Positions 20,000 to 47,899 of a DNA stretch of 64,000 nt are shown piece after piece. Location of the stretch: positions 24,118,001-24,182,000 of the forward strand of contig NC_047063.1 of assembly GCF_902459465.1 (NCBI RefSeq), given 5' to 3'. Under the pieces are notes generated by a model, which ran no database searches, was not told the DNA's origin, and saw only the letters and a program-made list of their open reading frames with translations. The position numbers and the translations under genes are program-made. The stretch's first letter is position 1, and each line of letters starts with the position of its first letter. Source of the stretch: Asterias rubens. Lineage: Eukaryota.

Positions 20000-20230
20000 T
20001 TGGTTTTTACCGATACACCGATGTGTGTTAGCACTGTATACTCAGTACTTCCCCCCCGAGTACTGTGAACAAAATATCACAGGCATGTTACTCGGGTGGG
20101 ATTTGAACCCACGACCCTTGCAATTCTAGAGCAGTGTCTTACCAACTGGACTACCGAGGTTGCCCCGTAGCTAGAGGCAGTTTGAGTCCCATGTTTTGGC
20201 AGCGGGTACCGCAACGATATAAGAGATGAA
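20000..20230 (-). mobile_element. tRNA-derived SINE (family S2)
   Basis: Minus strand GGTAAGACACTGCTCTAGAATTGCAAGGGTCGTGGGTTCAAATCCC; related fragment at about 6320-6435. Confidence 0.6.
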
Positions 20231-27301: not shown

Positions 27302-30300
27302 ATGGCAGGCGTACGGACGTACACCCAGGAGTTGGAGTATCTTCATCAGCTTTCCCCAAACATATGGCAGATCAAGAAAGGATTTGTTCCAAACATGAAG
27401 GTTAGTTTAATTACTAAACTGTGAATTATTCTACTGGAAAATAATCAAAGAAATTCGTTAATATTGTGAGTACTGTTTATTAAGATTCTGAAAAGGTGTT
27501 CAAAATTTAACCCTCGTACCATAAACCGTGTTTCTCAAGACAATCCATCTATAGAGTGGAGCCATACCCAAAAGGCTTCAATGAGACTGAACGAGACCAA
27601 TTTAAGTGGTGGACAATAAATCGAAGGGCGAGCGGTTAAACACAATTATTCATGTTTAATTATGGGGCCATCATTGCTGAAGTGCAAGCTTCAGACATGA
27701 TGCCAGGTCTCTGTGCAGTGGGGCCATGCAATAAGATGAATGGGGATTTTGACTGTGTTCTTTCTTTGTGACATTTACTTTGGACGATATGCACTGTGGG
27801 CAGTGTAGATTGCTTACCAGAGTGCTGGGCGAAAATATTGTTGAATTCTGGGCAGGCCTGCCCAGTGTTACCCACCGTGGCTACGACCCTTGTCATTTGG
27901 ATTTGGTGATCAAGATCTGTGGCACCAATCGACCAACCTTACAACTTTACAGTATAAAATATCAGGAACAATACTAGTACAGAGTATTAGATGAAGAACT
28001 TTTAATAAAGAAATTGCAAATTCAATGGCTGGAAAGTGTGTCATGTCTTACTTCACCATTATGTGCATTTAGCACTGCACCCCATAAGGATTTTAAGACA
28101 TCTTGAAGTATGCCCTATATCCATATGTGGGAGAGATTAGTGAAATAAATGCTATTTAGTGTGCGAGTTCCAGATGCATAAAAATGTTGAGGTACATGTA
28201 TAGTTCTTGATTCTTTAATTTCCAGGTTGAGGGAAGATTTTATGTCAACAGTAACTTGGAGAAGCTGATGTTTGAAGAGCTGAGGAACTCTTGTGCCAAC
28301 AAAGGTACATTATTTAATAATACTCGGTTTTTATATAGCGCTTTATAATATGTTATTTTTAAAATAATACTTGGTTCTTTATAGCTCTTTATAATATGTT
28401 ATTTAATAATACTTGGTTCTTTATAGCGCTTTATAATATGTTATTTAATAATACTTGGTTCTTTATAGCGCTTTATAATATGTTATTTAATAATACTTGG
28501 TTCTTATATAGCACTTTATAACATCCCTATAAGGGGCGTATCCAAGCGCACAGTATTTTTACCTGTAAGGTTTATGGAGCTACGATTTGAAGTATGAGAC
28601 CTATTCCTTTAAAGCACTCATTGGTTTACAAGCTTGGGCTGTGGCCCAACATGCAGCCAATTAAAACAGGAACAATAACAATAATAATAACAGTATTTAT
28701 AAAGCGCCAAATTGCCAAAGGATACAAGGTGCTGAGAAGGAAAGAAGAGGGAAAAAAAGCGGAACAAAGATAAAGACGACCAGCTACGAAGAGGCAAAAA
28801 GGTGGGTTTTAGAGCACGTTTGAAGGCTGTGACACTGTTTGAGCTTCTGGTAAGGGTAGGTAGAGAATTCCATAGTCGGGGAGCAGCAATTGAAAATGCC
28901 CTATCACCTGCAAGTTTATGGGTTTTGTGAACTGAAAGGGATTTACCAGTAGTAGAGCGAAGAGAGTACGAAGATGTCTGGAGTGAAAGGAGAGAGGAGA
29001 GATAATCCAGGGCATAGTGATTGAGGGATTTATATGTGTGGACCATTTTACGGAATTGAATGCGTTGGGCAACTGGAAGCCAGTGTAATTGCTTGAGAAG
29101 TGGAGATGAGTGAGTGAATTTGGGCAGCTTAAAGATAAGTCTGGCACAGCGGTTTTGGAGCCGTTAAAGGCGGGAAACATCTTTCTGTGAAACACCATTC
29201 AGGAGGCAGCAGCCATAGTCCAGCTTGGACAGAATTAAGGCACGAACAGCATTATGGCAGGCGCTGAAATCAAGAAACCTCCTGATACGGCTTAGGTTGC
29301 GTATATGCCAGTTAAGAGAGCGACAGAGCTGAGTAATGTAAGCAGACATGGACATGTTGCGATCAAAAACAACACCTAAGTTTCTGACAGATGGAGAAGG
29401 ATGAATTTGAGTGCCATTTAGATTAAAGGTGAGGTGATCCAGATTTTTGAGGTGAGTGGAAGAGGCTGCAACGAAGAATTCCGTCTTATCCGGGTTCATC
29501 TTGAGCTTATTGGTGACCAACCAGGATTGATTGAACACCAGGGTGAACCCCCTTTACTTTTTGGTAAGTGCACTTGGTTCTTTTAAAGGCGTTACACAAC
29601 ACACGGGACCCAACGGCTTTATGTCCCATCTGAAAGGCGAAGCAATAGTAAAGTGTCTTGCTTAAGAACACAAGTGTCACGACTGGGACTCGAACCCACA
29701 CTCAGCTCTGAAAAGAAACACCAGAGTTTGAATTCGGTGCTCTTCACCGCTCGGCAGCGACACTTCCCTTTAAAAACACATTTTGGCGAAATATGATGTA
29801 CAAACTAAATGACTTATACAAGAGAGGTTTGCAGTAACACCATGTGAATATCTTTTTTTTATTTTATCCATTGTCCCTGTAGCCATGGGTGGTTTTTTAC
29901 CAGGAGTAAAGCAGATCGCCAACGTTGCAGCCCTACCGGGTATAGTTGGCTACTCAGTGGGCCTACCGGACCTCCATTCTGGCTATGGATTTGCAATAGG
30001 TAAGTGAATACGTACATCTCCAAATAACCCACTGCACCCACAGCTATTGCCGCGGTGCCCTGTGCTTTTGCTGAGGTGCCCTGTGCAAGAGTCCAATACA
30101 AACTTACTGTGTCCCTACAAGTAAATTGCTGATCAAGGGGGAAGTTCAAGGCCTGTGACTGCATGCAAACCTTGCAGTGGTTGGGACTTATTTGGTTGCA
30201 ATGCTATGTTCCTCCAGAAGGAGCCCATTCTCACAATGTTTTATACTCCTTTGTTGGCTAACAAGTAGGTTTTTATGCTATTAATTCTTTCTTTTTTAGT

Positions 30301-33300
30301 AATTACCAATAGGTCCAGTGCCTTTAGTTAGTTCTTCAAGTTTGTCTTGCTTATTCGTTTTTTCCCGAATGCGCAGGTAACATGGCTGCATTCGACATGT
30401 CAGATCCAAATGCTGTTGTCTCGCCAGGGGGTGTAGGCTTTGATATCAACTGCGGCGTGAGACTCTTAAGAACAAATCTAGAAGAGAAAGATGTTCAACC
30501 GGTAAAAGAACAGCTAGCTCAAGCAATGTTTGATCACATACCAGTGGGGGTAGGGTCAAAAGGTGTAATACCAATGGGAGCCAGGTATGTTGGACAAAGT
30601 TAAAAACAATAACAACTGTAATGAGTGTGCACAACATTTGAAAATATTCAAAGATTTGAATGTAACTTAAATGCAGGCCTGGAATTTCATCTTTGTCAGG
30701 GCAAGGCCATTTTTGAAAAGGGCTATTGAAAAAACTCAAAGTCTATTGGAAACGGATGCCAATGGCCATGGCCTCTTTGAAATTCCAGGTCTTTAATTTA
30801 GAAAGGGCACTTCCATTAGGAAAATATAAAGTCTATGGGTAACCTTTGGAAGGGGCACCAAGGCCAAGACCAGGGCAACGGAGGCCATTCCATTTCCGAA
30901 ATTGTGCTTCAACTTTTGCAAAATTATTTGTTGGGTCAAAAACTGCGGGTACAGGGGTTGATTTCACAAAGAGTTAGGACTAGTCCTAGGAGATATAAAA
31001 AATGCATGGCTAGTCTTAAGTTAGGACGAGTAACTCATCTGAACTCGAGATAAGACTAGTCCTAACTCTGTGTGAAATCCACCATGGTTTTTGGACAATT
31101 ACCAGTATTGGCTGCATGCTTTAAAGCGACCAAATTGGTTTTCCTAGTGCTCATCATTATGCTCAGTTTTTAGTCTCAAACTTGAAGTTGTTTGTTAGCA
31201 GCACTGTTTCAATTATGACTTATGTTTGTATGATTTAATGCCAATATTCAGTAAGCAATGCAGTTATTTTGATGTGTTCCAAAAAACTTATTGAGTGTGA
31301 ATACTTCTGTATGAAAAGTTTTGATATGAATTAAGATGCTAATGTATTTAGCAATTTCCGTTCTTGATCCTGGCAGAGATCTTGAAGAAGCCTTGGAGAT
31401 GGGAATGGACTGGTCTCTAAGAGAAGGTAAGTGTGGAAGAAAACAACAAGGGTACATGAATTACTAACGAAAAGTGTGCTGTGGAGATAATGAAATTCAA
31501 TCCTGGTTTATTTCTGCGACAGACATTTAACGACTTGTCAACAAGTGTACCCTCTTTGAAGCTACCCTTGTATATCACCTGGCACACTTATGTCAGTGAG
31601 ATTAATTTTTTTAAATTATTATTCATAAATACCTAAGACAGTTTATCCACTCTGATTGGTCGAGAGGGCATCACGAGGGGTCGTTTGAACGGATGATATA
31701 CCATTTCATAGCTGGAGGGGTGTTGTGTTTAAAGAAATCATTGAAGAACTATAATTTTTGCATTTATTTTACCGTTTGACCAAGAAGTGTTTTTTGGCCG
31801 AAAAGGTATTTATGAATGGGACTCAAAGTGTGTTGAATCGGTTTTCAACTAGTGGTTTAAACCCGCCGAGGCCTGGTTTACCCGCCGAGGCCTTTTCCTC
31901 TCGGTAAAATTATCAAATCCAGGCCTCGGCGCAGGTTTAAACCACTAGTTGAAAACCTCTTGACCACACATTGATTCCCTTATTATCGTTACAAAGCAAG
32001 TTTGTTTTTCTCTCTCTTAACTATTCAGGTTATGCCTGGGCCGAGGACAAGGAACATTGTGAGGAGTACGGGAGAATGCTCCAAGCTGACCCCAGTAAGG
32101 TCAGCTCCCGTGCAAAGAAAAGAGGGCTCCCTCAGCTGGGGACGCTCGGTGCGGGCAATCACTACGCGGAAATACAGGTTGTGGATGAGATATACAACGA
32201 GCATGCCTCCAAGAAGATGGGAATCGATCACGTAGGACAGGTCAGTCAGGTCTAAAATTTTACACTGGACCACAGGCCCGAGGCCAGTAGTTTTAGTGTT
32301 GAGTGTTTTGTGAGTTTCTTTTTTTAGTTGAATATTAAAAGAGTTATACCTCACTGTTTAACGTCTCAAAAAAAAAAAAATATGTTAAAATGTTGACTTT
32401 GAATCTGATAGAATACCTTTCAATTCTACTGAGTAATGACATAATGAAGTCTACTCTCTAAAAAAAATGTGTAACTAAAATACATGTTAATAAACTGGTT
32501 CAGGTTTTTTTATTCTTTCTCATTTTGATTCTGGTCCTTTAGAAAGAATTCTGGTCCTGTAAACGTTTTGAGCCACAAGCCGTGTAAGTCTTGTGGATTT
32601 TCCACACCATTTCAAGCCCTGTCAGAGATTTTATAGTTAGTCAGAAAAGAAACAAGAAGTCCAATTTAAAAGTGGTGTGTTGTGACAGAGCGGTCAAGTT
32701 CACCAAACCCAAGCAAATCCCGGTCATAACACTTGTGCTCTTGAGCAATGCGTTTAACCACAATTACTTTTGAAATTCTGCTCTACCAACCAGGCCCTAA
32801 AACACAAATTGAAATAAATTATTATTTTTTTATTTATTTATTATATATATTTTTTTGGGGGGAGACAAACTCTTAAAGGAGAAAATAACAGGAAAACCCA
32901 CCCTTGTTTCCGCACGTTTCGCCATGTCATGACATGTGTTTACTATAAATCCGTAGTTCTCATTGTCGACAATTGATAATTGTTTCATGTTTTCTCAAAA
33001 AGTAAAGCATTTCATGGAAAAATGTTTTAAGAGAAGTCTTTTACCTTTACCTTCTATAAACCCTTTAAAGCCATTATACACTTTCGGTAAACAGTATTGT
33101 TTAAGTCCCACACTTCGTGTATCACAACTTATATATAAAACAACAAACCTGTGAAAATTTAGGCTCAATCGGTCATCGGAGTCGGGAGAAAATAACGGGA
33201 AAACCCACTCTTGTTTCCGCGCATTTCGCCGTGTCATGACATGTGTTTAAAACAAATCCGTAATTCTCGCTAACAAGGAATTATATTGTTTTACCATTTT

Positions 33301-36300
33301 CTCAAAAAGTAAAGTATTTCATGGACTAATATTTCAAGAGAAGTCTTTAACCATTACCTTCTGTAAACCCTGTAAATTATTTGTAAATCTGTGAACTTTT
33401 TTTGTTTTTTCTGTACCGAAAGTGGCTTTAAGTTATTTGTAAATCTGTGAACTTTTGTTTTATTTTTTGTTCGGAAAGTGTATATTGGCTTTAAAGAAAT
33501 GGAGATATAACCATATAATAACGCCCCAGATTGCAGAAAAGGGGTTTTAAAACTAAGATAATTTTCGAGCTTGCATGCTTTCGCAATTCATTTTTTTCTC
33601 TCAACAGCCTATCACATCCCTGTAATTGGTTTCCTTCCCCCCCCCCCTTCAAACAGGTGTGTGTGATGATACACAGTGGCAGTCGAGGATTAGGTCACCA
33701 GGTCGCGACCGATGCTCTTGTTGCCATGGAGAAAGCCATGAAGAGAGACAAGATTGACGTCAACGACCGTCAGCTAGCATGTGCTAGAATTCATTCACCT
33801 GAGGGTCAAGACTACCTGAAGGGAATGGCGGCAGCGGCAAACTATGCTTGGGTCAACAGAACGAGCATGACGTTCCTCACTAGACAGGTTAGCTCATAAG
33901 ACCACTGGGCTTGCAGTCACTGGACTAAACAATACTTACCAGGTCCTTCGTAATTGTTATAGCCTGAATTACATGTTGTATAATATAAATATAACAATAA
34001 GACTTGTAATGTGGTGGTATCCATCCTGCTTGGTGTTCAAGGCACAGACAAACGAAAAACAAAGAAAAAACAGGCACAACAAAATTAGTCCTTGAAAACC
34101 TGTGACATAAAATACGTAAAGACAAGATCTGAGATTAAGTGGTAGAGAGTTCCAGATGCATGGCCGGCTGAAGAAAAAGACCTGACACCCCATGAGTGTC
34201 GAGACTTGGGTTCAATGAGAAGAAGCATGGAACTTGATCGAAGATTCCTTGATGGAGTTTAAACTTGAAGTATATCAGAAATATAGTGGGGAGCCCTGCC
34301 ATTAAGAGCTTTGTGGACAATGAGCATCAGCTTGAAGATGATTCGTTGAGAGATAGGGAGCTGTAGTTGTTTCAGAATGGGGGTGATAGAACAGAATTTC
34401 CTAGACAGTGTCACAATGCGGGCAGTGTATTTTGGAGGCGTTGTTGTATAATTATGTGTTTGTACATTGGTAGGGAAAAACACTACCAAACTTGACTTGT
34501 GTGACTGGCCCTGTGCTACAGCAAAATACTTGAGGAGTTACTAAAAAAACCTCTGAGTGAATGGTCTCTAATCATGTTATACGACCAAGAAAATTATGCA
34601 ATTATTAAGTTTAATATGATTATGTTTTGTTTACATTTTAGGCATTTGCCAAGCAGTTCAAAGAAACACCGGATGAACTGGACATGCATGTCATTTATGA
34701 CGTATCACACAACATCGCTAAGGTGGAGGAGCACATATCCTTTGTCATTATTTATGTTTTCAACTTTATAATATTTCATGAGAAAAATTTATCTGGCAGT
34801 TAAACTCACTGGACACTATTGGTAATTGTCAAAGAAAAGTTTTCTCACTTTGTGTATCTCAACATATGCATAAAATAACAAACCTTTGAAAATTTGAGCT
34901 CAAATCGGTTGTCAAAGTTGCGAGATAACTATGAAAGAAAAACACCATTGTCACATGAAGTTATGTGCTTTCAGTACTTGATTTTGAGACCTCAAAATCT
35001 AATTCTGAGGTCTCAAATTAAAATTTGTGGCAAAATTACCTCTTTCTTGAAAACTACGTTACTTCAGAGGGAGCCGTTTCTCACAATGTTTTATACTATC
35101 AATCATTCCCCATTACTTTTTACCAAGTAAGGTTTTATGCTAATATTTATTTTGAGTAATTACCAATAGTGTCCACTGCCAGTTGTCTTCAGGTTGTGAC
35201 AGAGCAGTCGGGGACTGACATTTCATTATGATCAGGCAGGCCCTGAATTTCATTCTGGAAAGGGCACAACACAAAAGTACATGGCACCACGGCACTTGCT
35301 GTGTGTGTCGTGGGTTATTTCGGCGCCTGAATGATGCTGCGCCTGAGTTTAGCCTGTTGCAAAAAAAACACATGTTAGAAACCAGGGTTGCAACATCCTT
35401 TGATGTGTAAAGGGAACAAAGGGAAGTGGCCGAGCGGCTGAGAGCACCAAATTCAAACTCTGGTGTTTCTGATCAGCAGAGTGTTGTTGGGTCCCCAGCC
35501 GTCACACTTGTGTCCTTAAGCAAGACACTTAACCATTGCTTCGGATGGGACGTAAAGCTGTTGGTCCCATGTCTTGTGTAACGCATGTAAAATAACCCAG
35601 TGCACTTATCGAAAAGAGAAGGGGTTCGCCCCGGTGTTCCTGGCTGTGGCTGCTGTATGCGCCATGCACCTTGTAAACCCTTATAAAGTACTAAATAATT
35701 GGAATCAGAATTCATCACTGCAATAACCTATCTTTCTAAAAGGTTATATACTCAGCGCCTTGAGTACCTTGTTTGGTAGATGGGTGCGCTATATAAGACT
35801 TCGATATTATTTTTATTATTATTAACAAAGTTCCACAATGCAATGGTTCCTAATAATCAAATACACACCACAAGACCCTAAATTCTTTCGGAGATAAATC
35901 CTTGACTGATCCTCACATCTTAGACGGAAAGCAGAAGACGCTTCTTGTCCATCGTAAGGGATCAACGAGAGCCTTCCCTCCACATCACCCTCTCATCCCT
36001 GTGGATTATCAGGTCAGTAGTTTAAGCTCATCCCTAAATTGCAAGTGAGGCGGTACTAGCTTAGCTACAAGAAGGGGAAATCTTAAGTTTAGTTATGCTA
36101 ATTTCTTGCCACCATTTACAAAGTCTAAGTAAGTAAGTATTAAAAATTTAATTAGGTATTTGTATCAGTGTACAAGTGCAAAAAATGCCATCTTGATTTT
36201 GCAAGTAAAATGTGTCTCACGCATAAAAATGCTCCAGGCAAAAGCATTGTCTGGTGGCATGTACTTGTTTTAGGTTTACCTCAGTAAAACAAGACAAAAT

Positions 36301-38142
36301 TAATGAATGAATGAATAAATAGATTGTATTGTTGAGGAAAGGTTTTTTGTCTCCCTCAGATGACTGGCCAACCCGTTCTGATCGGGGGTACCATGGGAAC
36401 CTGTAGCTACGTGCTGACTGGAACAGAAAACGGAATGAAAGAGACATTCGGGACAACGTGCCATGGAGCTGTGAGTATTAAATAGAATTTGGATGTGAAT
36501 AAAGGAAAATAGACTACAACAGGATTTGAACCTGCGTCATTTGGATTAACGAGCTGGCACTCTACCAACAGAACCATCTAGCACAATGTTGGCATTCCAC
36601 CTTTTATGAATTATATGGTGGGGGGGGTCGGAGAGGTTCAGCACATACAGGTACACTCTCAGCCAAAACTGGTCTAGTACAAAATTATCTGTTTAAATTT
36701 TAACTGTGAGAAAACAGAATTAGCTGTTTCAAACTGCTTATCAACCTATGGTACAACTTTTTTTTTTAAATGGGTAATAGCTTGATGTGCTGACCCTATC
36801 TACTAGCAGTAGAGTCTTCCTTGAAGGCTAAATGACAACACAACAAACATGAATTGGTAACTAAGTTACAGGACATAACAAAGTTAACTACAAGGCTAAA
36901 TGACACACAACAAACATGAATTGGTAACTAAGTTACAGGACATAACAAAGTTAACTACTATTCAAGAAAGACTCTGCTAGGGCCATGAACTGATTTTTAC
37001 ATATTGATAATTAATCTACATTTTGTCTGCTTTTTATGCCTAGGGACGTGCCTGGTCTCGGTCTAAATCACGACGTAATCTTGACTACCATCAAGTGTTG
37101 AGCAAACTTCAGTCTCAAGGAATCTCTATCAGGGTGGCATCACCAAAGCTCGTCATGGAAGAGGTAATAATAATAACAATTTATTGACTTATATTTTGTC
37201 TATTCTGTAAAATGTACACAAGTGCATAACAAAATAAATAGACAATGATTTAAAAGCTAACAACTGGTAAAAAGCAAGGAAATACCACAATCCAAAAATA
37301 TGGGGAAAAAACAAGACTCCCCAACAGTTTTGGCTGAGGTTGAATGTGCTAAACCTCTCCCCCAAAATTGTTTCTTTTGTTATAGTTGTAGTTTTTTCTT
37401 TTGAGTTTTATCCCAATGATGATGGATTCCAAGGCCGAGTTCGAGCGGTTTATTTTTGGATAGTCAAGAACAAGTCAAGAATATTGTTTGAACTTTTGCA
37501 TGGTGTAGGATCGCTGTTCTTGTTTCATCCGCTCAACAATGATGTGATATAGCGCACGAAAAGTGACTGGTACTGGTCAAATGTGACTACGTGGTGGGTC
37601 AGTCAAATAGGCTGATGGGTAGAAACTTTCAAACTTTTTTGGGGCGATATCTGTTATTAGTCTAATGTATTATATTCAACTTATCAAAATAAACAATCTA
37701 TTTGAGCACACCAAAATTTTAGTTTTATCTCAGGAACACACAAATTTGCTTACCAGAATAAGGTTTCAAACCAAAGTACAATTTTTACCTGTACAAAATG
37801 TGACTGGTGTCCTGTTTATTTTTGCTTAGCAGACAAAAATTGCTAAGCATAATTCTCTGCTTAAGCATCTCTGTGAAATCTACATTTATATCTGATTAAA
37901 ACAATGAAACAGTTCCATTAATGGCATGTTAATGGAATGTTGATAGTAACTTGTTATCCTTTGGATAAAAAGTTTTATTTATTTATATCCTCATAATTGT
38001 TTGTTTTGCCTCCCTCTCTTTCTCTCTTTCTCAGGCACCCGAGTCCTACAAAAATGTCACTGATGTCGTAGACACTTGTCACGCAGCGAACATAAGCAAG
38101 AGGGCAATTAAGCTCAGACCCATCGCAGTTATCAAAGGATAG
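27302..38142 (+). CDS. RTCB: RNA-splicing ligase RtcB (tRNA ligase catalytic subunit), 12 coding exons, 507 aa
   Basis: Exons 27302-27400, 28226-28304, 29883-29999, 30377-30584, 31377-31426, 32029-32240, 33657-33887, 34642-34734, 35917-36012, 36360-36470, 37044-37163 and 38035-38142. Motifs GFDINCG, GAGNHY, IHSGSRG, VHRKG, TCHGAGR and C-terminal LRPIAVIKG. The frame is continuous only if intron 8 is spliced AT-AC. Confidence 0.97.
28313..28520. repeat. 42-bp minisatellite, about 5 copies, directly after the RTCB exon 2 donor
   Basis: Unit ATTTAATAATACTTGGTTCTTTATAGCGCTTTATAATATGTT at 28401, 28443 and 28485 (last copy diverges), plus flanking variants. Confidence 0.9.
28670..29535 (-). mobile_element. 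5'-truncated L2/CR1-type LINE (RT C-terminal region and 3' tail), RTCB intron 2
   Basis: Frameshifted ORFs [12 protein letters not shown]...VRNLGVVFD...ILSKLDYG and [17 protein letters not shown]...FKRALK are typical L2-clade ORF2 ends; TTA-rich tail at about 28670-28690. Confidence 0.88.
29527..29765 (-). mobile_element. tRNA-derived SINE (family S1), RTCB intron 2
   Basis: The minus strand has A-box-like GCCGAGCGG and B-box GGTTCGAGTCC, followed by a body matching 35425-35815. Confidence 0.75.
32873..33493. mobile_element. MITE family B, one complete copy (33065-33493) plus an upstream partial copy
   Basis: TTAAAGCCATTATACACTTTCGG ... CGGAAAGTGTATATTGGCTTTAA; orientation opposite to the 23631 copy; the right end is duplicated. 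Confidence 0.7.
33960..34450 (-). mobile_element. Degenerate L2-like LINE 3' fragment, RTCB intron 7
   Basis: Remnants [39 protein letters not shown] and [11 protein letters not shown]. Confidence 0.75.
34810..35180. mobile_element. Family A MITE inside the U12 intron of RTCB
   Basis: TGGACACTATTGGTAATTG ... TTACCAATAGTGTCCACTGCC; orientation reversed relative to the 49442 copy. Confidence 0.75.
35425..35815 (+). mobile_element. tRNA-derived SINE (family S1), near full length, inside the RTCB U12 intron
   Basis: GTGGCCGAGCGG head, body cacttgtgtccttaagcaagacactt, and an L2-like tail gcgctatataagact...attatt. Confidence 0.75.
36824..36959. repeat. About 68-bp tandem duplication, RTCB intron 10
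   Basis: AAGGCTAAATGAC...AAAGTTAACTAC at 36824 and 36892. Confidence 0.9.
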
Positions 38143-40440
38143 ACCTTGACTGGAGACTTTTGCAATGATGCTTCCATATTGGTCTTGTTCCCTGTGTGCA
38201 ACAATGACATATCAATGCTTATCATCTACAAAATTGGGGGCAGACTATTTCCATTTTGAAGGAAGAAGAACGCTGAGCACGACTTTCAGTATGTGCCCTG
38301 CTTTACGTGGACGCTGTGTATCAATTAACTATCGATACTACACGACACAAATGTAAAGCACATTGATTGCAGTTGAAACTGTCAATATTTGTTTAACTTA
38401 GTGGTCCGTCTACGTGACAGTAGCTAAATGGCAAGAGTTGCCACAAACACTTGTGACGTGATATTACTTTACTAAACATGCGCAAAAATACAATATAATA
38501 AACTGGGCAACATGTGTTTATAAAGTCAGGCATGATATTCCAACTGATGTTAAATTTTCCTGAGTTTTTTTTTCCCCAGAAAAATCAGCAAAATTGGTAT
38601 TACTCACACACTCACTCAGTCAACCCAAATTGTCCATTGCTGCACGTTAGAGACGGGTATTAAATAGCCTGTAAAATCTGTTAAAGGCAACGGACACTAT
38701 TGGTAATTACTCAAAATAATTGTTAGCAAAAAAAAACTTACTTGGTATCGAGCAATGGAGAGTTGTTGATAATGTAAAACATTGTGAGAGACGGTTTCTT
38801 CTTTAGTAACCTAGTTTTTTACATATTTTTACTTTTTTTGCTAATATCAATGTGGTCTCACAACTGATGTCTCATGACTCATTCAGTGTTGTCAAGGTTC
38901 ACTAGGTTACTCCATGGGGCAAAAATAATATGGCTGTGTTATGTTTTACTTTAGGCAAGAGAATTCCTCATACTTACAAGAGAGTTTCTCGTACTTTCTT
39001 TGTAAATTATTGTACAGATGTTAAGGCCTGAGAAGTGCTGGAATTAACTCGGGAAAAGGGAAAGTTCTAAGGAATCTGTTTTGTTTTCGTTTTCATTTCT
39101 GGGTTTTTTTAAATTTGGGGTTGAACAAGGAAAATTTACTAGAGTGGGACTCAAACCAAAAGACCTTTTGGAGTACCGAGTCGGCATTCTACCAACTGAG
39201 CTATCTTGTTTTTGTTTCGTTACTTTGTTTTTTTCGGGCACTATTTAGTGCTGTTTTAGCATGATGGTCTCCTTTGGTAGGCATCATTTCAAACTTGTTC
39301 TCATTATATTTTGTTAACATTATTTGTTCTCGTCAGATTTTGAACAACCAATTATGATTTATTTTTTCCAATTAAAAATTTTTCTTAAACTCCTTGAGCC
39401 TTTCAAATTATTTTGAACAGGTAAAGCAGTCACCTTATTCCTAAACCTCATATTTCTTTGAATAAGGTGTTTGATGTCGCCACCACTTGGCGGAAACCAT
39501 TAGACACACATGCATGACATGTTAGATTGTGCCACAATTATTTTAAAGAAATTTTACCACATTTTCAGACTGAATGCTATGTTTATTTACTTCTAAAGTT
39601 TAAAAATACTGTCCGCACAATATTATAACATTGCTTGCTACTGAGTCACAGTGTGACTTTATAGAGTGAAGATGAAAGACTTTAAGTCAATAAACTGTAT
39701 CTTTAGTACATTTATGAAATGAAAATAGATTATATAAGACTGGGCAGCCAAAGCCATTTGACAAAAAATTAATGTTGAAGACATCTCACCCCTGTGTAGT
39801 TTCTGGTCAGAACCAGTTTCCTTTCTTTAGTTATTTTGTTTGACAACCAGGGCTCAAATTAAGTACAGAGCTGTGAAAGTAAAAGTACATAACAATTTTG
39901 GCTGGTAATCTGTTTCTGCTAAGCAGTACTATTCTGCGCTTTGCAAGTGTTTGCCTACATGCAGGTAGTTTTGTTTTTAGTGAAGATATAAAAACAGATT
40001 ACAGGCTGATATTTATTTCAAATGCAAATCTACCCTTAATTGTGTTTTCTTGTAAAATATTTTGTTAATTTGTATTTCACAATAATTAAAACAAAAGTGA
40101 TGTTAAGAAAAACAAGTGATTTGTTCTTTCCAATCATGTATTTCTTAAAAAATTAATAAATAAATGCTGAATAATGTTCAGTTATATTGACCAAATAATT
40201 GGTTCTTTGTTTATTTTTGTAAAGATATAAACAACAAAATTATGACAACTGAGAATTTTACTCTAAAATAAAATAATTGTATTCAACATATATATCAATA
40301 TATAGCGCCCTCAGTTGACGAGTAAACACCAATAAAAACATGACAAAAAGTCGTCTACATCATTTGCACGCAGCAGGTTGAGTGAGGTCCGTAAAGTTGA
40401 TTCTTTCTAACTTCTAAACGTTCCCATTATTTGCATTAAA

Positions 40441-43400
40441 ATGAGTGGAGGACTTGCACCTAGTAAGACGACGTGTTATGTCTCAAATCTACCATTTTCA
40501 CTGACGAACAACGATCTGCATAAAGTGAGTGAAGATTAAAAAAAAATTGCTTTCATTTTGTGCTTTACTTTTCCCCTTAACCAGTAACGATATGGTTCTG
40601 AATACGATGCAATGTGGTGGCCAAAGAACTTAGTGTGTGTTGCGCAAGATAACGCATAAACCACTAACAATCATGCTATAGTCTACTACCTACTACTAGG
40701 TATGTGTGTAGAGGACAATGTTGAAAATATGTTATGGAGTTCAGTTGTACGTATATGAATATATATAAATATGATGGTTACATTTAATTTAAAACTTAAA
40801 TTTCTATCATTTATGATTTAGTCTTAAATTTTTTAGAATTAGACTAGAATTAGACTTATTTACTAATACTAGGTTAGTTAGACTAGAGTAGTTGCGATAA
40901 TTGTAATCCTCCCCCACTGACGGCAGCGGAGGGAGGAGGGTTACGATTATTGAAACTTATTCTGAGTCGTAGTTGCTTGCCCCGCCCTAGCCCCACTTGT
41001 GTGGCCAAGATTCAGCTATCCTTGGCCACACAAGTGGGGCTAGCCCGGCCCATGCACACTACATGCATTGTCCAGGTGGATATCATGTCGGCTGAACTGA
41101 AGGTGGATATATTCAGGTTTGCTGCCAGCAAACTTAAACCTAATGTAGTTGCACATCTGATAATAATACTATAGTGGCGAGCCAATGGCAAGAGGTTGTT
41201 TTGCACATTTACTGAGTTTTGGAGGAAAACAACCTCAAAAGACCTGTAGTGACTTTAGGGGTGTCGGAACATAGGAGTGTCGGAATATAGGGGTTTCGGA
41301 ACATAGGGGTGTCGGAAAATATGTTCAATTGTCGGAACATAGGGGTGTCGTAATATAGGGGTGTCAGAACATAGGGGTGTCGGAATATAGGCCGAGTTGT
41401 CGGAACATATGTGTCGGAAAATAGGGGTGTCGGAATATAGGTGTGTAACTAAAGTGATCAGCATAAAAACTGAAACTAGTAAACGTCTCTGTTTTGTTGT
41501 CTTTGATGTTATCACAATAAGGTTTTTTTGCCAATAGCAAAATATCAAGAGAGGGCGCTGTTGAACCTACACAAAGGTATTGCGTGTGCGAGTCGTAGAA
41601 ACTGCATAGAAACCGCCCCATATTCCTTCCCACAACGCATTGCGGTGCTGAATCGCGATAAACCTTATTAGGGGTCATTTGGGGTAGGGTATTTTATTAC
41701 ATTAGTCACTTTTTTGCATTTTGGTTGTTGGTAAAAATATCTTTCTTTGGTTCCTTTTTATTTCAGATCTTTGAAAAATATGGCAAAGTTGTGAAGTAAG
41801 TAAAGTACCTAATGACAATTTACACTGTGCATTGAATCAGTAACATTACTTAGTGTTTTATTATAATGTACTGTACTCAAGTTTCAAGGTTCGATCGGAA
41901 CCTGAGCACGATTTGGGTCATCGAGTTGGCGTAGTGGTATCTTCCCTCGCTTCCACCTCTGGGACGCTGGTTTGCATTCAGTGAGGGCACTTATGAGGAA
42001 AATTGGGTTTCCCTGCCCTTCCTTGTCTTCTCTTCATTGTGTTATTGGCTAGTACTCAACAGTGATAAGGTCCCCTTTCTGAGAATTCTAGGCTTCCCAA
42101 CCATATTCATGTACATTTAAATGAAAAATTTACTTGTTTTTGAACTGAGCTACCTTCCGATGTTCCCTAATCCCTCCATTTAAACAGTAGTGTTTTGTAG
42201 GTTCCTTCGTAATACAAAATAAAACCTAGATAAGAATGTGGTTCTTAGTACAACTTACTTGAGTATTTTAAGATTTGTTCTTGTTGGATGAAAACTAACA
42301 ACAAACTACAGTGTAGTCATTGCAAACTGGCTATTTTCAGAAATTCCCAAGTAAAGAACGAACACACATTCCGTCTTATGTACGTCAGCATTCAACTCAC
42401 AAGTTATTGATATGAATTTCTCCCACCTGTTGCAGGGTGACCATTTCAAAGGACAAGGAGACAAGGAGGAGTACAGGCGTGGCATTTGTTTTATTCCTTC
42501 AAAAAGATTCCTGTTTCAAGGCAATCAAGGGTCTTAACGGTAGAGAGGTAAGTATTAAGCTTGGGCGATATCGATTTATTTTATTCACGATATATCGCCG
42601 ACAATATATCGCGATATTCGATATAATCGCGATTAATTAAATTTGACATCATCAGTCTTCAAACTCCCAGTGAAAGTTGTAGAAGATACAGTCATAGCAT
42701 AAGAGAGGTGTTCTAATGACCTATTTTTTTGGTTTTACTCCAAACCTATGGGTTGCAAGATGTCTCAGCTAGGAAATACATCGCGATATTGCGATACTTG
42801 ATTGATATCGCGATATATCGCGATATATCGATATTTCGATTAAAACCAATTCGATCCGATATCGAAATCGTTTCCAAATTAATATCACGATATTCGATAA
42901 TATCGTGGTATCGCCCAAGTTTAGCAAGTATACTATAATATGGACTGGCATTGCTAATCATTCAATGGATGACATTTAACGGTCGGACAGCTGCAGCCGA
43001 TTTCACGAAACTTTACGCAACTGCGTAAGTCCAACTCGGATTTACGTAGTTTGGTAAAGTTTCGTGAAATCAGCTGCAGGAGGCTTAAAAAGTTATTTGA
43101 AAGTTCACTTAATAAAACAAAGTACCCATCAGTCACAGAAATATGTTTATGCTTTTGGGTTTTATTAGTCAACAAGTTTTGATTCAGTAACTCTCTCATC
43201 CAAAATATTCAAATTATCAGTCATTCACTTTGAGATATTTTATTATGTATTTTTGTAGCTGTTTGGAAGAAAGTGGAAGGTATCCATAGCAGCAGACAAT
43301 GGACGAGCGGCAGAATTCATCAAAAAGAAGAATTATCCAGACAAAACGAGATGCTATGAATGTGGTGTGAGTAAAAGCATTGTAATATTACGATGCTCCA

Positions 43401-46400: not shown

Positions 46401-47899
46401 CCACGTGACGCCCTCTCCACCAATAGGAATAGCGAAACTGTCCGAGGTATTTATGTATAAGAAACAATTTTCAGTAGCCTATCACCCCTTTGTGTGTAAT
46501 TTTACCCCAAATCATCTAGTCTACCAGTCAGAGGTATTATCTTATGCCAGACACTTTTTTTCTGAGAAGACCTTTGAAATTTGCATTCTGCAGATTTCAT
46601 CTTTTTTCTTTTCCTTTTTTTATGTCATCATCTTCATCTTTTGTTATTAAAATTTCAGTGCAGTTTTTTATTTTGTATTTATCGTTTGATGTTTCTTAGG
46701 CGTTAGACAGGAACAAGAAAATTGTCACGACTGTATAATCAAGAATTAGACAATCAATGTCTTTGTTTTATTTCAAAATGTACATTTGCTGTGGATGTAA
46801 AAAAGAACTTCCTTTGCAAATTTAAGAAATATAAAAATACAAACAATTTTATATTTTGCTGTTTGCTCTTCTGAAGAACTTGGTACGATTTTAGCTTTAG
46901 ATCATCAGTTTGAAATATTCATAAGAAAAAGACATGCTGTAACAACCATTAATTTTATACAACTCTATTGGGAGAAGTTTTGGTTCTGAGAACTCCCAGT
47001 GTGGTCTTGTGGTGTTGAAAAGTATACTCATTACGTGCCGACCAACTTAACTTCTTGAAACCATGTTCCTGCTATTATGGTGCATGTATAATCCATACTT
47101 AAATGGATTGAAACACACACTGGGCAGTTTGGGACCGCAACCAATTATGCTAGCTCATTAAAACTGGAGTCAACTGTACAATGAGAAAGATAAACTTGCT
47201 GCAACAGGACGCTGTGGCAAACACTCTTCACAGAATCATTTCACAGGACGCTGTGGCATACACTCTTCACAGAATCATTTAACAGGACGCTGTGGCATAC
47301 ACTCTTCACAGAATCATTTAACAGGACGCTGTGGCATACACTCTTCACAGAATCATTTAACAGGACGCTTTGGCATACACTCTTCACAGAATCATTTAAC
47401 AGGACGCTGTGGCATACACTCTTCACAGAATCATTTAACAGGACGCTGTGGCATACACTCTTCACAGAATCATTTATCAGGACGCTGTGGCATACACTCT
47501 TCACAGAATCATTTATCAGGACGCTGTGGCATACACTCTTCACAGAATCATTTAACAGGATGCTGTGGCATACACTCTTCACAGAATCATTTATCAGGAC
47601 GCTGTGGCATACACTCTTCACAAAATCATTTCACACTCTACACAGTGGCATTTAAAATGAGTTCATTTTCTCCACGGAAACATGATACAAAATAAGTTTC
47701 TCACTTGTACATTTCTTATCTCCGCTTCTAATAGAGGGCGAAAGAAGAGGAAGATGTCTACAGAGACACTGTGGCACGAGGAGCCTACAATGAGTTTGCC
47801 TCATTCTCCTCTTCATCAGTCCAAGGACCTCCCTCAAAGAAGCTCAAATTGAAGCAGAGCTCCTACTTCAGTGATGAGGAGGAAATTGACGGGGACTGA
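40441..47899 (+). CDS. ZCRB1: U11/U12 di-snRNP 31 kDa protein (RRM plus CCHC zinc knuckle), 7 coding exons, 228 aa
   Basis: Exons 40441-40524, 41767-41795, 42436-42547, 43259-43366, 43764-43888, 46053-46116 and 47735-47899; phases consistent. Motifs [60 protein letters not shown] and C-terminal SYFSDEEE. Confidence 0.96.
41256..41443. repeat. 17-bp minisatellite TAGGGGTGTCGGAACAT, about 11 degenerate copies
   Basis: Directly visible in ZCRB1 intron 1. Confidence 0.85.
42556..42923. mobile_element. hAT-like MITE with 8-bp target-site duplication at the ZCRB1 intron 3 donor
   Basis: TIRs TAAGCTTGGGCGATAT / GTATCGCCCAAGTTTA; ATCG-rich subterminal repeats; flanks GTAAGTAT (42548-42555) and GCAAGTAT (42924-42931). 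Confidence 0.8.
45060..45370 (+). mobile_element. Highly degenerate L2-like 3' end, ZCRB1 intron 5
   Basis: gctgctccaaaactatggcataatctacct ([10 protein letters not shown]) and a tail with gcgcaatagagtat...gttgttattatt. Confidence 0.5.
47205..47632. repeat. 39-bp minisatellite, about 11 copies, ZCRB1 intron 6
   Basis: Unit CAGGACGCTGTGGCATACACTCTTCACAGAATCATTTAA; explains the 13-aa periodic ORF 47241-47621. Confidence 0.95.

What the first reader, a model, noticed from the sequence alone, without database searches (positions are those of the whole stretch)
34735..35916. RTCB depends on a U12-type AT-AC intron just upstream of catalytic motifs
Seen: a perfect ATATCCTTT donor, a TCCTTGAC branch site 10 nt from the terminal AC, and exact restoration of the conserved protein. 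Retention reads 22 codons into a TAA, removing the VHRKG and TCHGAG motifs. The nearest GT-AG alternative (GT at 34723, AG at 35922-35923) deletes 19 nt and frameshifts, so GT-AG-only gene finders would mis-annotate the gene. Known: RtcB ligates spliced tRNAs and XBP1 mRNA, and minor introns are often rate-limiting. Inference: tRNA and XBP1 ligation capacity is gated by the minor spliceosome in this animal. I do not know whether this intron is shared with vertebrate RTCB.
Basis: partly seen in the sequence, partly recalled or inferred. Interest (0 to 1): 0.72.

Follow-up and report, generated by a model that had tools for sequence, protein, structure and literature searches.

The report
Ancient minor-spliceosome intron in starfish RTCB

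Summary
Observation confirmed. Intron 8 of RTCB (34735-35916, + strand, phase 0) starts with ATATCCTTT. It has TCCTTGAC with the branch A 11 nt before the terminal AC. The other ten introns are GT-AG.

Joining 34734 to 35917 gives a 507-aa protein identical to the RefSeq RtcB homolog of Asterias rubens, so the public annotation already uses this junction. Two spliced transcript contigs with no mismatches carry exactly this join and exclude the GT-AG alternative. Exons 8 and 9 abut without gap or overlap on solved human RTCB.

The intron is ancient. At the same codon and phase:
- a hemichordate, a crinoid and amphioxus have an AT-AC U12-type intron;
- Nematostella has a GT-AG U12-type intron;
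- the sponge Oscarella has a short U2-type intron.

It is precisely absent, with both flanking introns kept, in Ciona, a teleost, a bird, Lingula, a scallop and Daphnia. RTCB is not in a published human/mouse minor-intron list. So it is not shared with the vertebrates examined.

Productive RTCB mRNA therefore needs this splice. That the minor spliceosome does it follows from the motifs and was not tested. That it limits or gates ligase supply is untested. This is a new member of a known kind, of low interest. The scan reached the same verdict for an AT-AC intron in AMD1 of this genome.

The parts
27302..38142 (+). RTCB (RNA-splicing ligase RtcB homolog) coding region: 12 exons, 11 introns, 507 codons plus TAG
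   Evidence: Exon map and translation; product 100% identical to the RefSeq Asterias rubens protein P0343; exons match solved RTCB structures
34642..34734 (+). Exon 8 (31 codons, ends ...NIAKVEEH)
   Evidence: Aligns to 7p3b_A residues 333-363, E 3e-11; preceded by ttttag acceptor
34735..35916 (+). Intron 8, 1182 nt, phase 0, AT-AC termini, U12-type
   Evidence: removed in transcript contigs of runs X1 and X2; present in a DNA-like contig of X9 that spans the 3' splice site unspliced (35792-35941)
34735..34743 (+). U12-type 5' splice site ATATCCTTT
   Evidence: the same 9-mer is the donor in Ptychodera and Antedon, ATATCCTTC in Branchiostoma, GTATCCTTT in Nematostella
34801..34803 (+). In-frame TAA reached if intron 8 is retained (22 codons into the intron)
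35899..35906 (+). U12-type branch-point sequence TCCTTGAC (branch A at 35905, 11 nt before the intron's last base)
   Evidence: orthologues have TCCTTAAC, CCTTAAC or TCCTTGAC at similar distances from the 3' end
35915..35916 (+). Terminal AC of the intron
35917..36012 (+). Exon 9 (32 codons, [32 protein letters not shown])
   Evidence: Aligns to 7p3b_A residues 364-395, E 2.7e-14; followed by gtcagt donor
34798..35265 (.). High-copy interspersed repeat inside intron 8
   Evidence: Summed contig word depth of 1e5-1e6 in all four runs
35422..35889 (.). Second high-copy repeat inside intron 8 (SINE-like)
   Evidence: Depth 1e4-1e6 in all four runs; no tRNA or Rfam call

Best explanation
Intron 8 of the Asterias rubens RTCB gene is a genuine, constitutively removed U12-type (minor-spliceosome) intron of the AT-AC subtype. 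Inferred mechanism, from established knowledge of this intron class: U11 snRNA pairs with the ATATCCTTT donor, U12 snRNA pairs with TCCTTGAC and bulges the branch A, and U4atac/U6atac-U5 catalyse removal, joining 34734 to 35917. This is the only join that gives full-length RTCB. Retention would stop translation 22 codons into the intron, before the VHRKG and TCHGAG segments. The intron is inherited: it was already U12-type at this codon in the cnidarian-bilaterian ancestor, and an intron stood at this position in the metazoan ancestor. It was cleanly deleted in the tunicate+vertebrate lineage and in the protostomes sampled, and it is U2-type in one sponge. Shown here: the motifs, the excision at the predicted junction, the identity with the annotated protein, and the cross-phylum conservation and losses. 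Inferred: that the minor spliceosome performs the excision.
For: Motifs and positions. All ten other introns are GT-AG and none has a TATCCTT donor. Transcripts: in X2 a 1747-nt contig with no mismatches maps 33653-33885, then 92 unlisted nt, then 35914-36008, 36356-36470, 37044-37161 and 38033-38200. The 92 nt equal 34640-34731, i.e. exon 8 with 2 ambiguous nt gained and 3 lost. In X1 a 1735-nt contig leaves exactly 187 nt (92 + 95) between the exon 7 and exon 10 pieces. Both contigs contain 35917-35923, which the GT-AG alternative would delete. Protein: contiguous on human RTCB structures and on an archaeal RtcB; 100% identical to RefSeq A. rubens RTCB and 99.6% to A. amurensis. Conservation at the same codon and phase: AT-AC U12-type in Ptychodera, Antedon and Branchiostoma; GT-AG U12-type in Nematostella; U2-type in Oscarella; absent, with neighbouring introns kept, in Ciona, icefish, dove, Lingula, scallop and Daphnia. 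Three further metagenome contigs of eukaryotic origin carry a U12 donor at this codon. Minor-spliceosome capacity: the window encodes a ZCRB1 (U11/U12-31K) homologue, and other AT-AC introns were noted in this genome.
Against: Dependence on U11/U12/U6atac was not and cannot be tested here. The runs are labelled 'RNA?' (a guess) and are assembled contigs, so minor isoforms and retention are invisible. The exon 8 piece of the contigs was not printed and its presence is deduced from record arithmetic. The 3-nt CAC microhomology leaves the junction formally ambiguous at RNA level. Phase 0 is the less common phase for U12-type introns (PMC7367187).
Confidence: 0.93

Rival explanations
1. One reading: the intron is a regulatory gate. 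Slow or signal-dependent minor splicing, with retention leading to a premature stop and decay, would set RTCB supply and hence tRNA and XBP1 ligation capacity in this animal.
For: Retention gives an early TAA upstream of three further exon junctions, so decay is plausible. Some minor introns are spliced slowly or depend on U6atac level (own knowledge of the literature, not tested here). The unique middle of intron 8 (35266-35421) shows low non-zero contig depth in the RNA-labelled runs, 10.9 and 3.3 against exon contig depths of 44.7 and 29.9.
Against: There are no retention data. Contig depths are sums over all contigs and repeat edges, and other introns also show low depth. Six animals from several lineages deleted the intron precisely without visible change to the gene, which argues against an indispensable control role.
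Confidence: 0.12
2. It is a U2-type AT-AC intron removed by the major spliceosome.
For: Rare U2-type AT-AC introns exist (own knowledge; PMC7367187 lists AT-AC among the U2-type terminal dinucleotides).
Against: The donor is the full U12 consensus, and a U12 branch motif lies 11 nt from the 3' end with no polypyrimidine tract. The Nematostella orthologue changed its termini to GT-AG yet kept TATCCTTT and TCCTTGAC, which points to selection on U11/U12 pairing. AT-AC introns are poorly recognised by the U2-type spliceosome (PMC7367187).
Confidence: 0.03
3. The junction is wrong, or the locus is an artefact or pseudogene, and the real mRNA uses another in-frame splice.
For: 32 in-frame, stop-free GT/GC-AG pairs exist within 60 nt of the two splice sites.
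Against: Every one of them deletes or replaces conserved residues. The transcript contigs carry the AT-AC join. The product equals the RefSeq protein. The complete 507-codon frame is intact.
Confidence: 0.01

Closest known systems
Orthologous RTCB introns of Ptychodera flava (L091), Antedon mediterranea (L082) and Branchiostoma belcheri (L085)
   Same: Same codon (after ...NIAKxEEH), phase 0, AT-AC termini, ATATCCTT[TC] donor, a CCTTAAC-type branch motif about 10-17 nt from the 3' end; lengths 418-1091 nt
   Different: Branch motif TCCTTAAC, or GCCTTAAC in Antedon, rather than TCCTTGAC; intron bodies unrelated
Nematostella vectensis RTCB intron (L081)
   Same: Same position and phase; TATCCTTT donor core and the identical TCCTTGAC branch motif; 1052 nt
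   Different: GT-AG termini, the other U12 subtype, showing a subtype switch within one orthologous intron
Human and mouse minor introns catalogued in MIDB (Olthof et al. 2019, PMC6717393)
   Same: Same motif class: the donor 9-mer ATATCCTTT is listed for SRSF12 and CACNA2D3, and TCCTTGAC for CFAP74
   Different: RTCB itself is not in those lists. A bird and a teleost have exons 8 and 9 fused.
Oscarella lobularis RTCB intron (L088)
   Same: An intron at the same codon and phase
   Different: 59 nt, GTATGT...AG, no U12 motifs, so U2-type. This fits the published U12-to-U2 conversion model (PMC7367187), but the direction was not tested here.

Membership tests
U12-type (minor-spliceosome) intron | 5' splice site matching /[AG]TATCCTT | tested here: met
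   ATATCCTTT at 34735-34743
U12-type (minor-spliceosome) intron | Branch-point sequence TCCTTRAC close to the 3' splice site, without a polypyrimidine tract | tested here: met
   TCCTTGAC at 35899-35906, branch A 11 nt from the 3' end; the bases between are TGATCCTCAC
U12-type (minor-spliceosome) intron | AT-AC or GT-AG termini | tested here: met
   AT at 34735-34736, AC at 35915-35916
U12-type (minor-spliceosome) intron | Excised in vivo at the predicted junction | tested here: met
   Spliced contigs in runs X1 and X2, by piece coordinates and record arithmetic; identical RefSeq protein
U12-type (minor-spliceosome) intron | Motifs conserved at the orthologous position in other lineages | tested here: met
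   Ptychodera, Antedon, Branchiostoma and Nematostella; three metagenome contigs
U12-type (minor-spliceosome) intron | Removal depends on U11, U12, U4atac and U6atac snRNPs | not testable with these tools
   Only indirect support: a ZCRB1 (U11/U12-31K) homologue in the window and other AT-AC introns noted in this genome
U12-type (minor-spliceosome) intron | Classifier score (intronIC or MIDB position-weight matrices) above threshold | not tested
   No such tool was available; only a consensus comparison was made
RtcB / RTCB 3'-phosphate RNA ligase (Pfam PF01139) | Full-length sequence homology including the VHRKG and TCHGAG segments | tested here: met
   507-aa product; PDB RTCB hits for exons 8 and 9; 83-88% identity to named animal RTCB proteins that carry PF01139
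RtcB / RTCB 3'-phosphate RNA ligase (Pfam PF01139) | Ligase activity on tRNA exon halves and XBP1 mRNA | not testable with these tools
   Inferred from orthology only

The most novel reading that the evidence does not exclude
In non-vertebrate deuterostomes and cnidarians the retained U12 intron could serve as a tunable switch: the level of the minor spliceosome, for example of unstable U6atac under stress signalling, would set RTCB supply and so the XBP1 branch of the unfolded-protein response and tRNA maturation. The clean loss of the intron in tunicates and vertebrates would then have uncoupled the ligase from that control.
Probability: 0.06. Interest if true: 0.55.

Novelty: new member of a known kind. 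Interest (0 to 1): 0.2.

Why it matters
It adds RTCB to the genes that carried a U12-type intron in early animals and lost it on the way to vertebrates. One orthologous intron shows all three known fates side by side: kept as AT-AC, switched to the GT-AG U12 subtype, and either replaced by a U2-type intron or deleted precisely. That makes it a tidy teaching and benchmark case for intron-class evolution and for gene finders. It does not change what is known about RTCB or about minor splicing. In starfish, amphioxus, hemichordates and sea anemones, perturbing the minor spliceosome should hit RTCB, which is worth remembering when such knockdowns are interpreted.

Tried and rejected
(1) I used an alignment of the 12 exon peptides on an archaeal RtcB scaffold as a profile query. 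The profile collapsed to 5 columns, found nothing, and cost one search.
(2) The joints table of read laying was swamped by high-copy repeats inside the intron. The junction had to be read from the contig-piece table, and intron retention could not be measured.
(3) The shark RTCB locus gave no DNA because the file was too large, so an icefish and a dove stood in for vertebrates. No mammalian locus was read. The mammalian statement rests on the MIDB lists only, and those files may have been cut when stored.
(4) Paper searches for RTCB with 'minor intron', 'U12' or 'U12-type' gave no relevant paper. The supplements of PMC7367187 hold no gene list, and those of PMC7507305 and PMC11347168 are not held.
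(5) ARAGORN and Rfam found no RNA gene in the intron, so a hosted snoRNA or tRNA was rejected.
(6) A PDB search with the exon I took for ZCRB1's zinc-knuckle exon gave nothing. An ORF stretch that contains the N-terminal exon gave ZCRB1 as its only hit.
(7) In-frame GT/GC-AG alternatives were listed and rejected, because each damages conserved sequence and none fits the transcripts.

Full report
**What is in the sequence**

The + strand between 27302 and 38142 carries a complete 12-exon RTCB gene of 507 codons. Ten of its eleven introns are GT-AG. Intron 8 (34735-35916, 1182 nt, phase 0) is the exception.
- It begins with ATATCCTTT and ends with AC.
- TCCTTGAC lies at 35899-35906. The branch A at 35905 is 11 nt before the intron's last base, and 10 nt separate the motif from exon 9.
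- No pyrimidine tract lies between the motif and the 3' end.

- Read-through gives 22 codons and then TAA at 34801-34803.
- The nearest GT (34723) and AG (35922-35923) would remove 19 nt of mRNA.

Across both strands of the window the donor 9-mer occurs twice (0.94 expected). TCCTTRAC also occurs twice (4.6 expected). Their joint placement at the one pair of sites that restores the protein is not a chance event.

**Does the join restore the protein?**

Exon 8 aligns to residues 333-363 of solved human RTCB (7p3b_A) and exon 9 to residues 364-395, so the two abut without gap or overlap. An archaeal RtcB fetched as a scaffold is also continuous across this point.

The spliced product is 100% identical over 507 residues to the RefSeq protein 'tRNA-splicing ligase RtcB homolog [Asterias rubens]'. 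It is 99.6% identical to the Asterias amurensis protein. So the window is starfish DNA, and the public annotation already uses this AT-AC junction. The concern about GT-AG-only gene finders is hypothetical.

**Is it spliced in vivo?**

I laid the contigs of three RNA-labelled runs and one DNA-like run on 33550-38200. The joints table was swamped by high-copy repeats inside the intron, but the table of contig pieces is decisive.

In run X2 a 1747-nt contig with no mismatches maps as follows:
- exon 7 (33653-33885) at record positions 821-1053;
- 35914-36008 at record positions 1146-1240;
- then exons 10, 11 and 12 back to back.

The 92 unlisted record positions equal 34640-34731. That is exon 8 shifted by the 2 nt (AG) it shares with the end of intron 7 and the 3 nt (CAC) it shares with the end of intron 8.

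In run X1 a 1735-nt contig leaves exactly 187 nt (92 + 95) between its exon 7 and exon 10 pieces. Both contigs contain 35917-35923, which the GT-AG alternative would delete.

A contig of the DNA-like run X9 crosses the 3' splice site unspliced (35792-35941), so the intron is genomic.

Caveats:
- The exon 8 piece itself was not printed, so its presence is deduced from arithmetic.
- The run type is a guess.
- Contigs cannot show rare isoforms or retention.
- The CAC microhomology means that only the AT-AC placement has recognised termini.

I also listed all 32 in-frame, stop-free GT/GC-AG pairs within 60 nt of the two sites. Each deletes or replaces conserved residues, and none fits the contigs.

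**Is it shared with other animals?**

An exon-7 search of the representative library gave a chimeric nematode RTCB model. Searching with its RTCB part, and then with a shark RTCB, gave named animal RTCB proteins. I fetched eleven gene loci. Ten proteins threaded exactly through their DNA from end to end. The icefish model failed at residue 177, and its junction was read by direct peptide matching.

State at the codon after ...NIAKxE[EQ]H, phase 0:

| Species | Group | State at this codon |
|---|---|---|
| Ptychodera flava | hemichordate | ATATCCTTT ... TTCCTTAAC ... AC |
| Antedon mediterranea | crinoid | ATATCCTTT ... GCCTTAAC ... AC |
| Branchiostoma belcheri | cephalochordate | ATATCCTTC ... 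ATCCTTAAC ... AC |
| Nematostella vectensis | cnidarian | GTATCCTTT ... TTCCTTGAC ... AG (the GT-AG U12 subtype) |
| Oscarella lobularis | sponge | 59-nt GTATGT...AG intron, U2-type |
| Ciona intestinalis | tunicate | no intron |
| Chaenocephalus aceratus | teleost | no intron |
| Columbina picui | bird | no intron |
| Lingula anatina | brachiopod | no intron |
| Mizuhopecten yessoensis | mollusc | no intron |
| Daphnia magna | crustacean | no intron |

Where there is no intron, the coding DNA is continuous across this codon. In Ciona, the dove, Lingula and the scallop both flanking introns (after residues 332 and 395 in window numbering) are kept, so the loss was a precise deletion of this one intron. 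Daphnia keeps only the upstream one. The icefish flanks could not be read.

The human and mouse minor-intron tables of Olthof et al. 2019 (PMC6717393) contain MAPK8, RABL2A, SRSF12 and others, but not RTCB, Rtcb or C22orf28.

A pattern scan of metagenome contigs found three more eukaryotic contigs with a U12 donor at this codon: one AT-AC and two of the GT subtype. Their source organisms are not known. The AT-AC contig's nearest named RTCB is from the demosponge Halichondria, at about 75% identity.

The simplest history has four parts:
- An intron stood at this codon in the metazoan ancestor.
- It was U12-type by the cnidarian-bilaterian ancestor at the latest.
- It was kept in ambulacrarians, amphioxus and cnidarians.
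- It was deleted in the tunicate+vertebrate stem and in the sampled protostomes.

The sponge's U2-type intron fits the published one-way U12-to-U2 conversion model (Moyer et al. 2020, PMC7367187). That direction is inference.

**How it most likely works**

From established knowledge of this intron class, U11 pairs with the donor, U12 pairs with the branch motif, and U4atac/U6atac-U5 catalyse removal. I did not test this.

Nematostella changed its termini while keeping both internal motifs. AT-AC introns are poorly used by the major spliceosome (PMC7367187). Both points argue against major-spliceosome removal.

The animal has the machinery:
- An ORF stretch at 40411-40494 that contains the first coding exon of a downstream gene (ATG at 40441) gives human ZCRB1, the U11/U12-31K protein, as its only PDB hit.
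- Other AT-AC introns were noted elsewhere in this genome.

Productive RTCB mRNA therefore depends on this splice, which by its motifs is minor-spliceosome work. That the step is limiting or regulated is untested. The repeated clean loss of the intron in other lineages argues against an indispensable control role.

**Comparison and verdict**

This is an ordinary U12-type intron in a gene that is not a minor-intron gene in human or mouse. I found no paper naming RTCB as such. I file it as a new member of a known kind, already captured implicitly by RefSeq, and of low interest. An earlier follow-up in this scan reached the same kind of verdict for an AT-AC intron in starfish AMD1.

Noticed in passing
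window 40441 to about 47900, + strand: A ZCRB1 (U11/U12-31K, a minor-spliceosome-specific protein) homologue lies about 2.3 kb downstream of RTCB on the same strand, so a minor-intron gene sits next to a minor-spliceosome gene. An ORF stretch containing its first coding exon gives human ZCRB1 (2e5h_A) as its only PDB hit, E 2e-4. The later exons were recognised by eye only.
   Followed up: partly
window 34798-35265 and 35422-35889 (inside intron 8); also 34018-34485, 36670-36981 and 37606-37917: These stretches have summed contig depths of 1e3 to 1e6 in all four runs (RNA-labelled and DNA-like alike), so they are very high-copy interspersed repeats filling the RTCB introns. The one at about 35420 looked tRNA-derived and SINE-like by eye, but neither ARAGORN nor Rfam calls it.
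   Followed up: partly
window 20088-20160, - strand: A tRNA gene, the only Rfam match at gathering score in the whole window (43.3 bits).
   Followed up: no
window 28363-28518 (RTCB intron 2) and about 47160-47690: Tandem repeats show up as repeated peptides in the ORF listing: a 42-nt unit at least three times in intron 2, and a 39-nt unit about a dozen times near 47.2-47.7 kb.
   Followed up: no
window RTCB exon map compared with L082, L085 and L091: The starfish gene lacks the introns after residues 220 and 273 that Antedon, Ptychodera and Branchiostoma keep. It retains one after residue 255 that Antedon and Ptychodera lack but Branchiostoma, Nematostella and Oscarella have. Intron loss within echinoderms is therefore mosaic.
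   Followed up: partly
protein P0271 (Magallana gigas, 740 aa) and P0024 (Rhabditophanes, 396 aa): Two public gene models look wrong. The oyster model repeats the central RTCB segment twice (duplicate tblastn alignments at residues 273-338 and 507-572). The nematode model appears to fuse an unrelated N-terminal part (precomputed Pfam PF00456 and PF00676) to the C-terminal two thirds of RTCB.
   Followed up: no
L092 (metagenome contig VSKX01018057.1): A eukaryotic contig of unknown source with an AT-AC U12-type intron at the same RTCB codon. Its nearest named RTCB is from the demosponge Halichondria (about 75% identity). If it is a sponge, the U12 state reaches the base of animals.
   Followed up: partly
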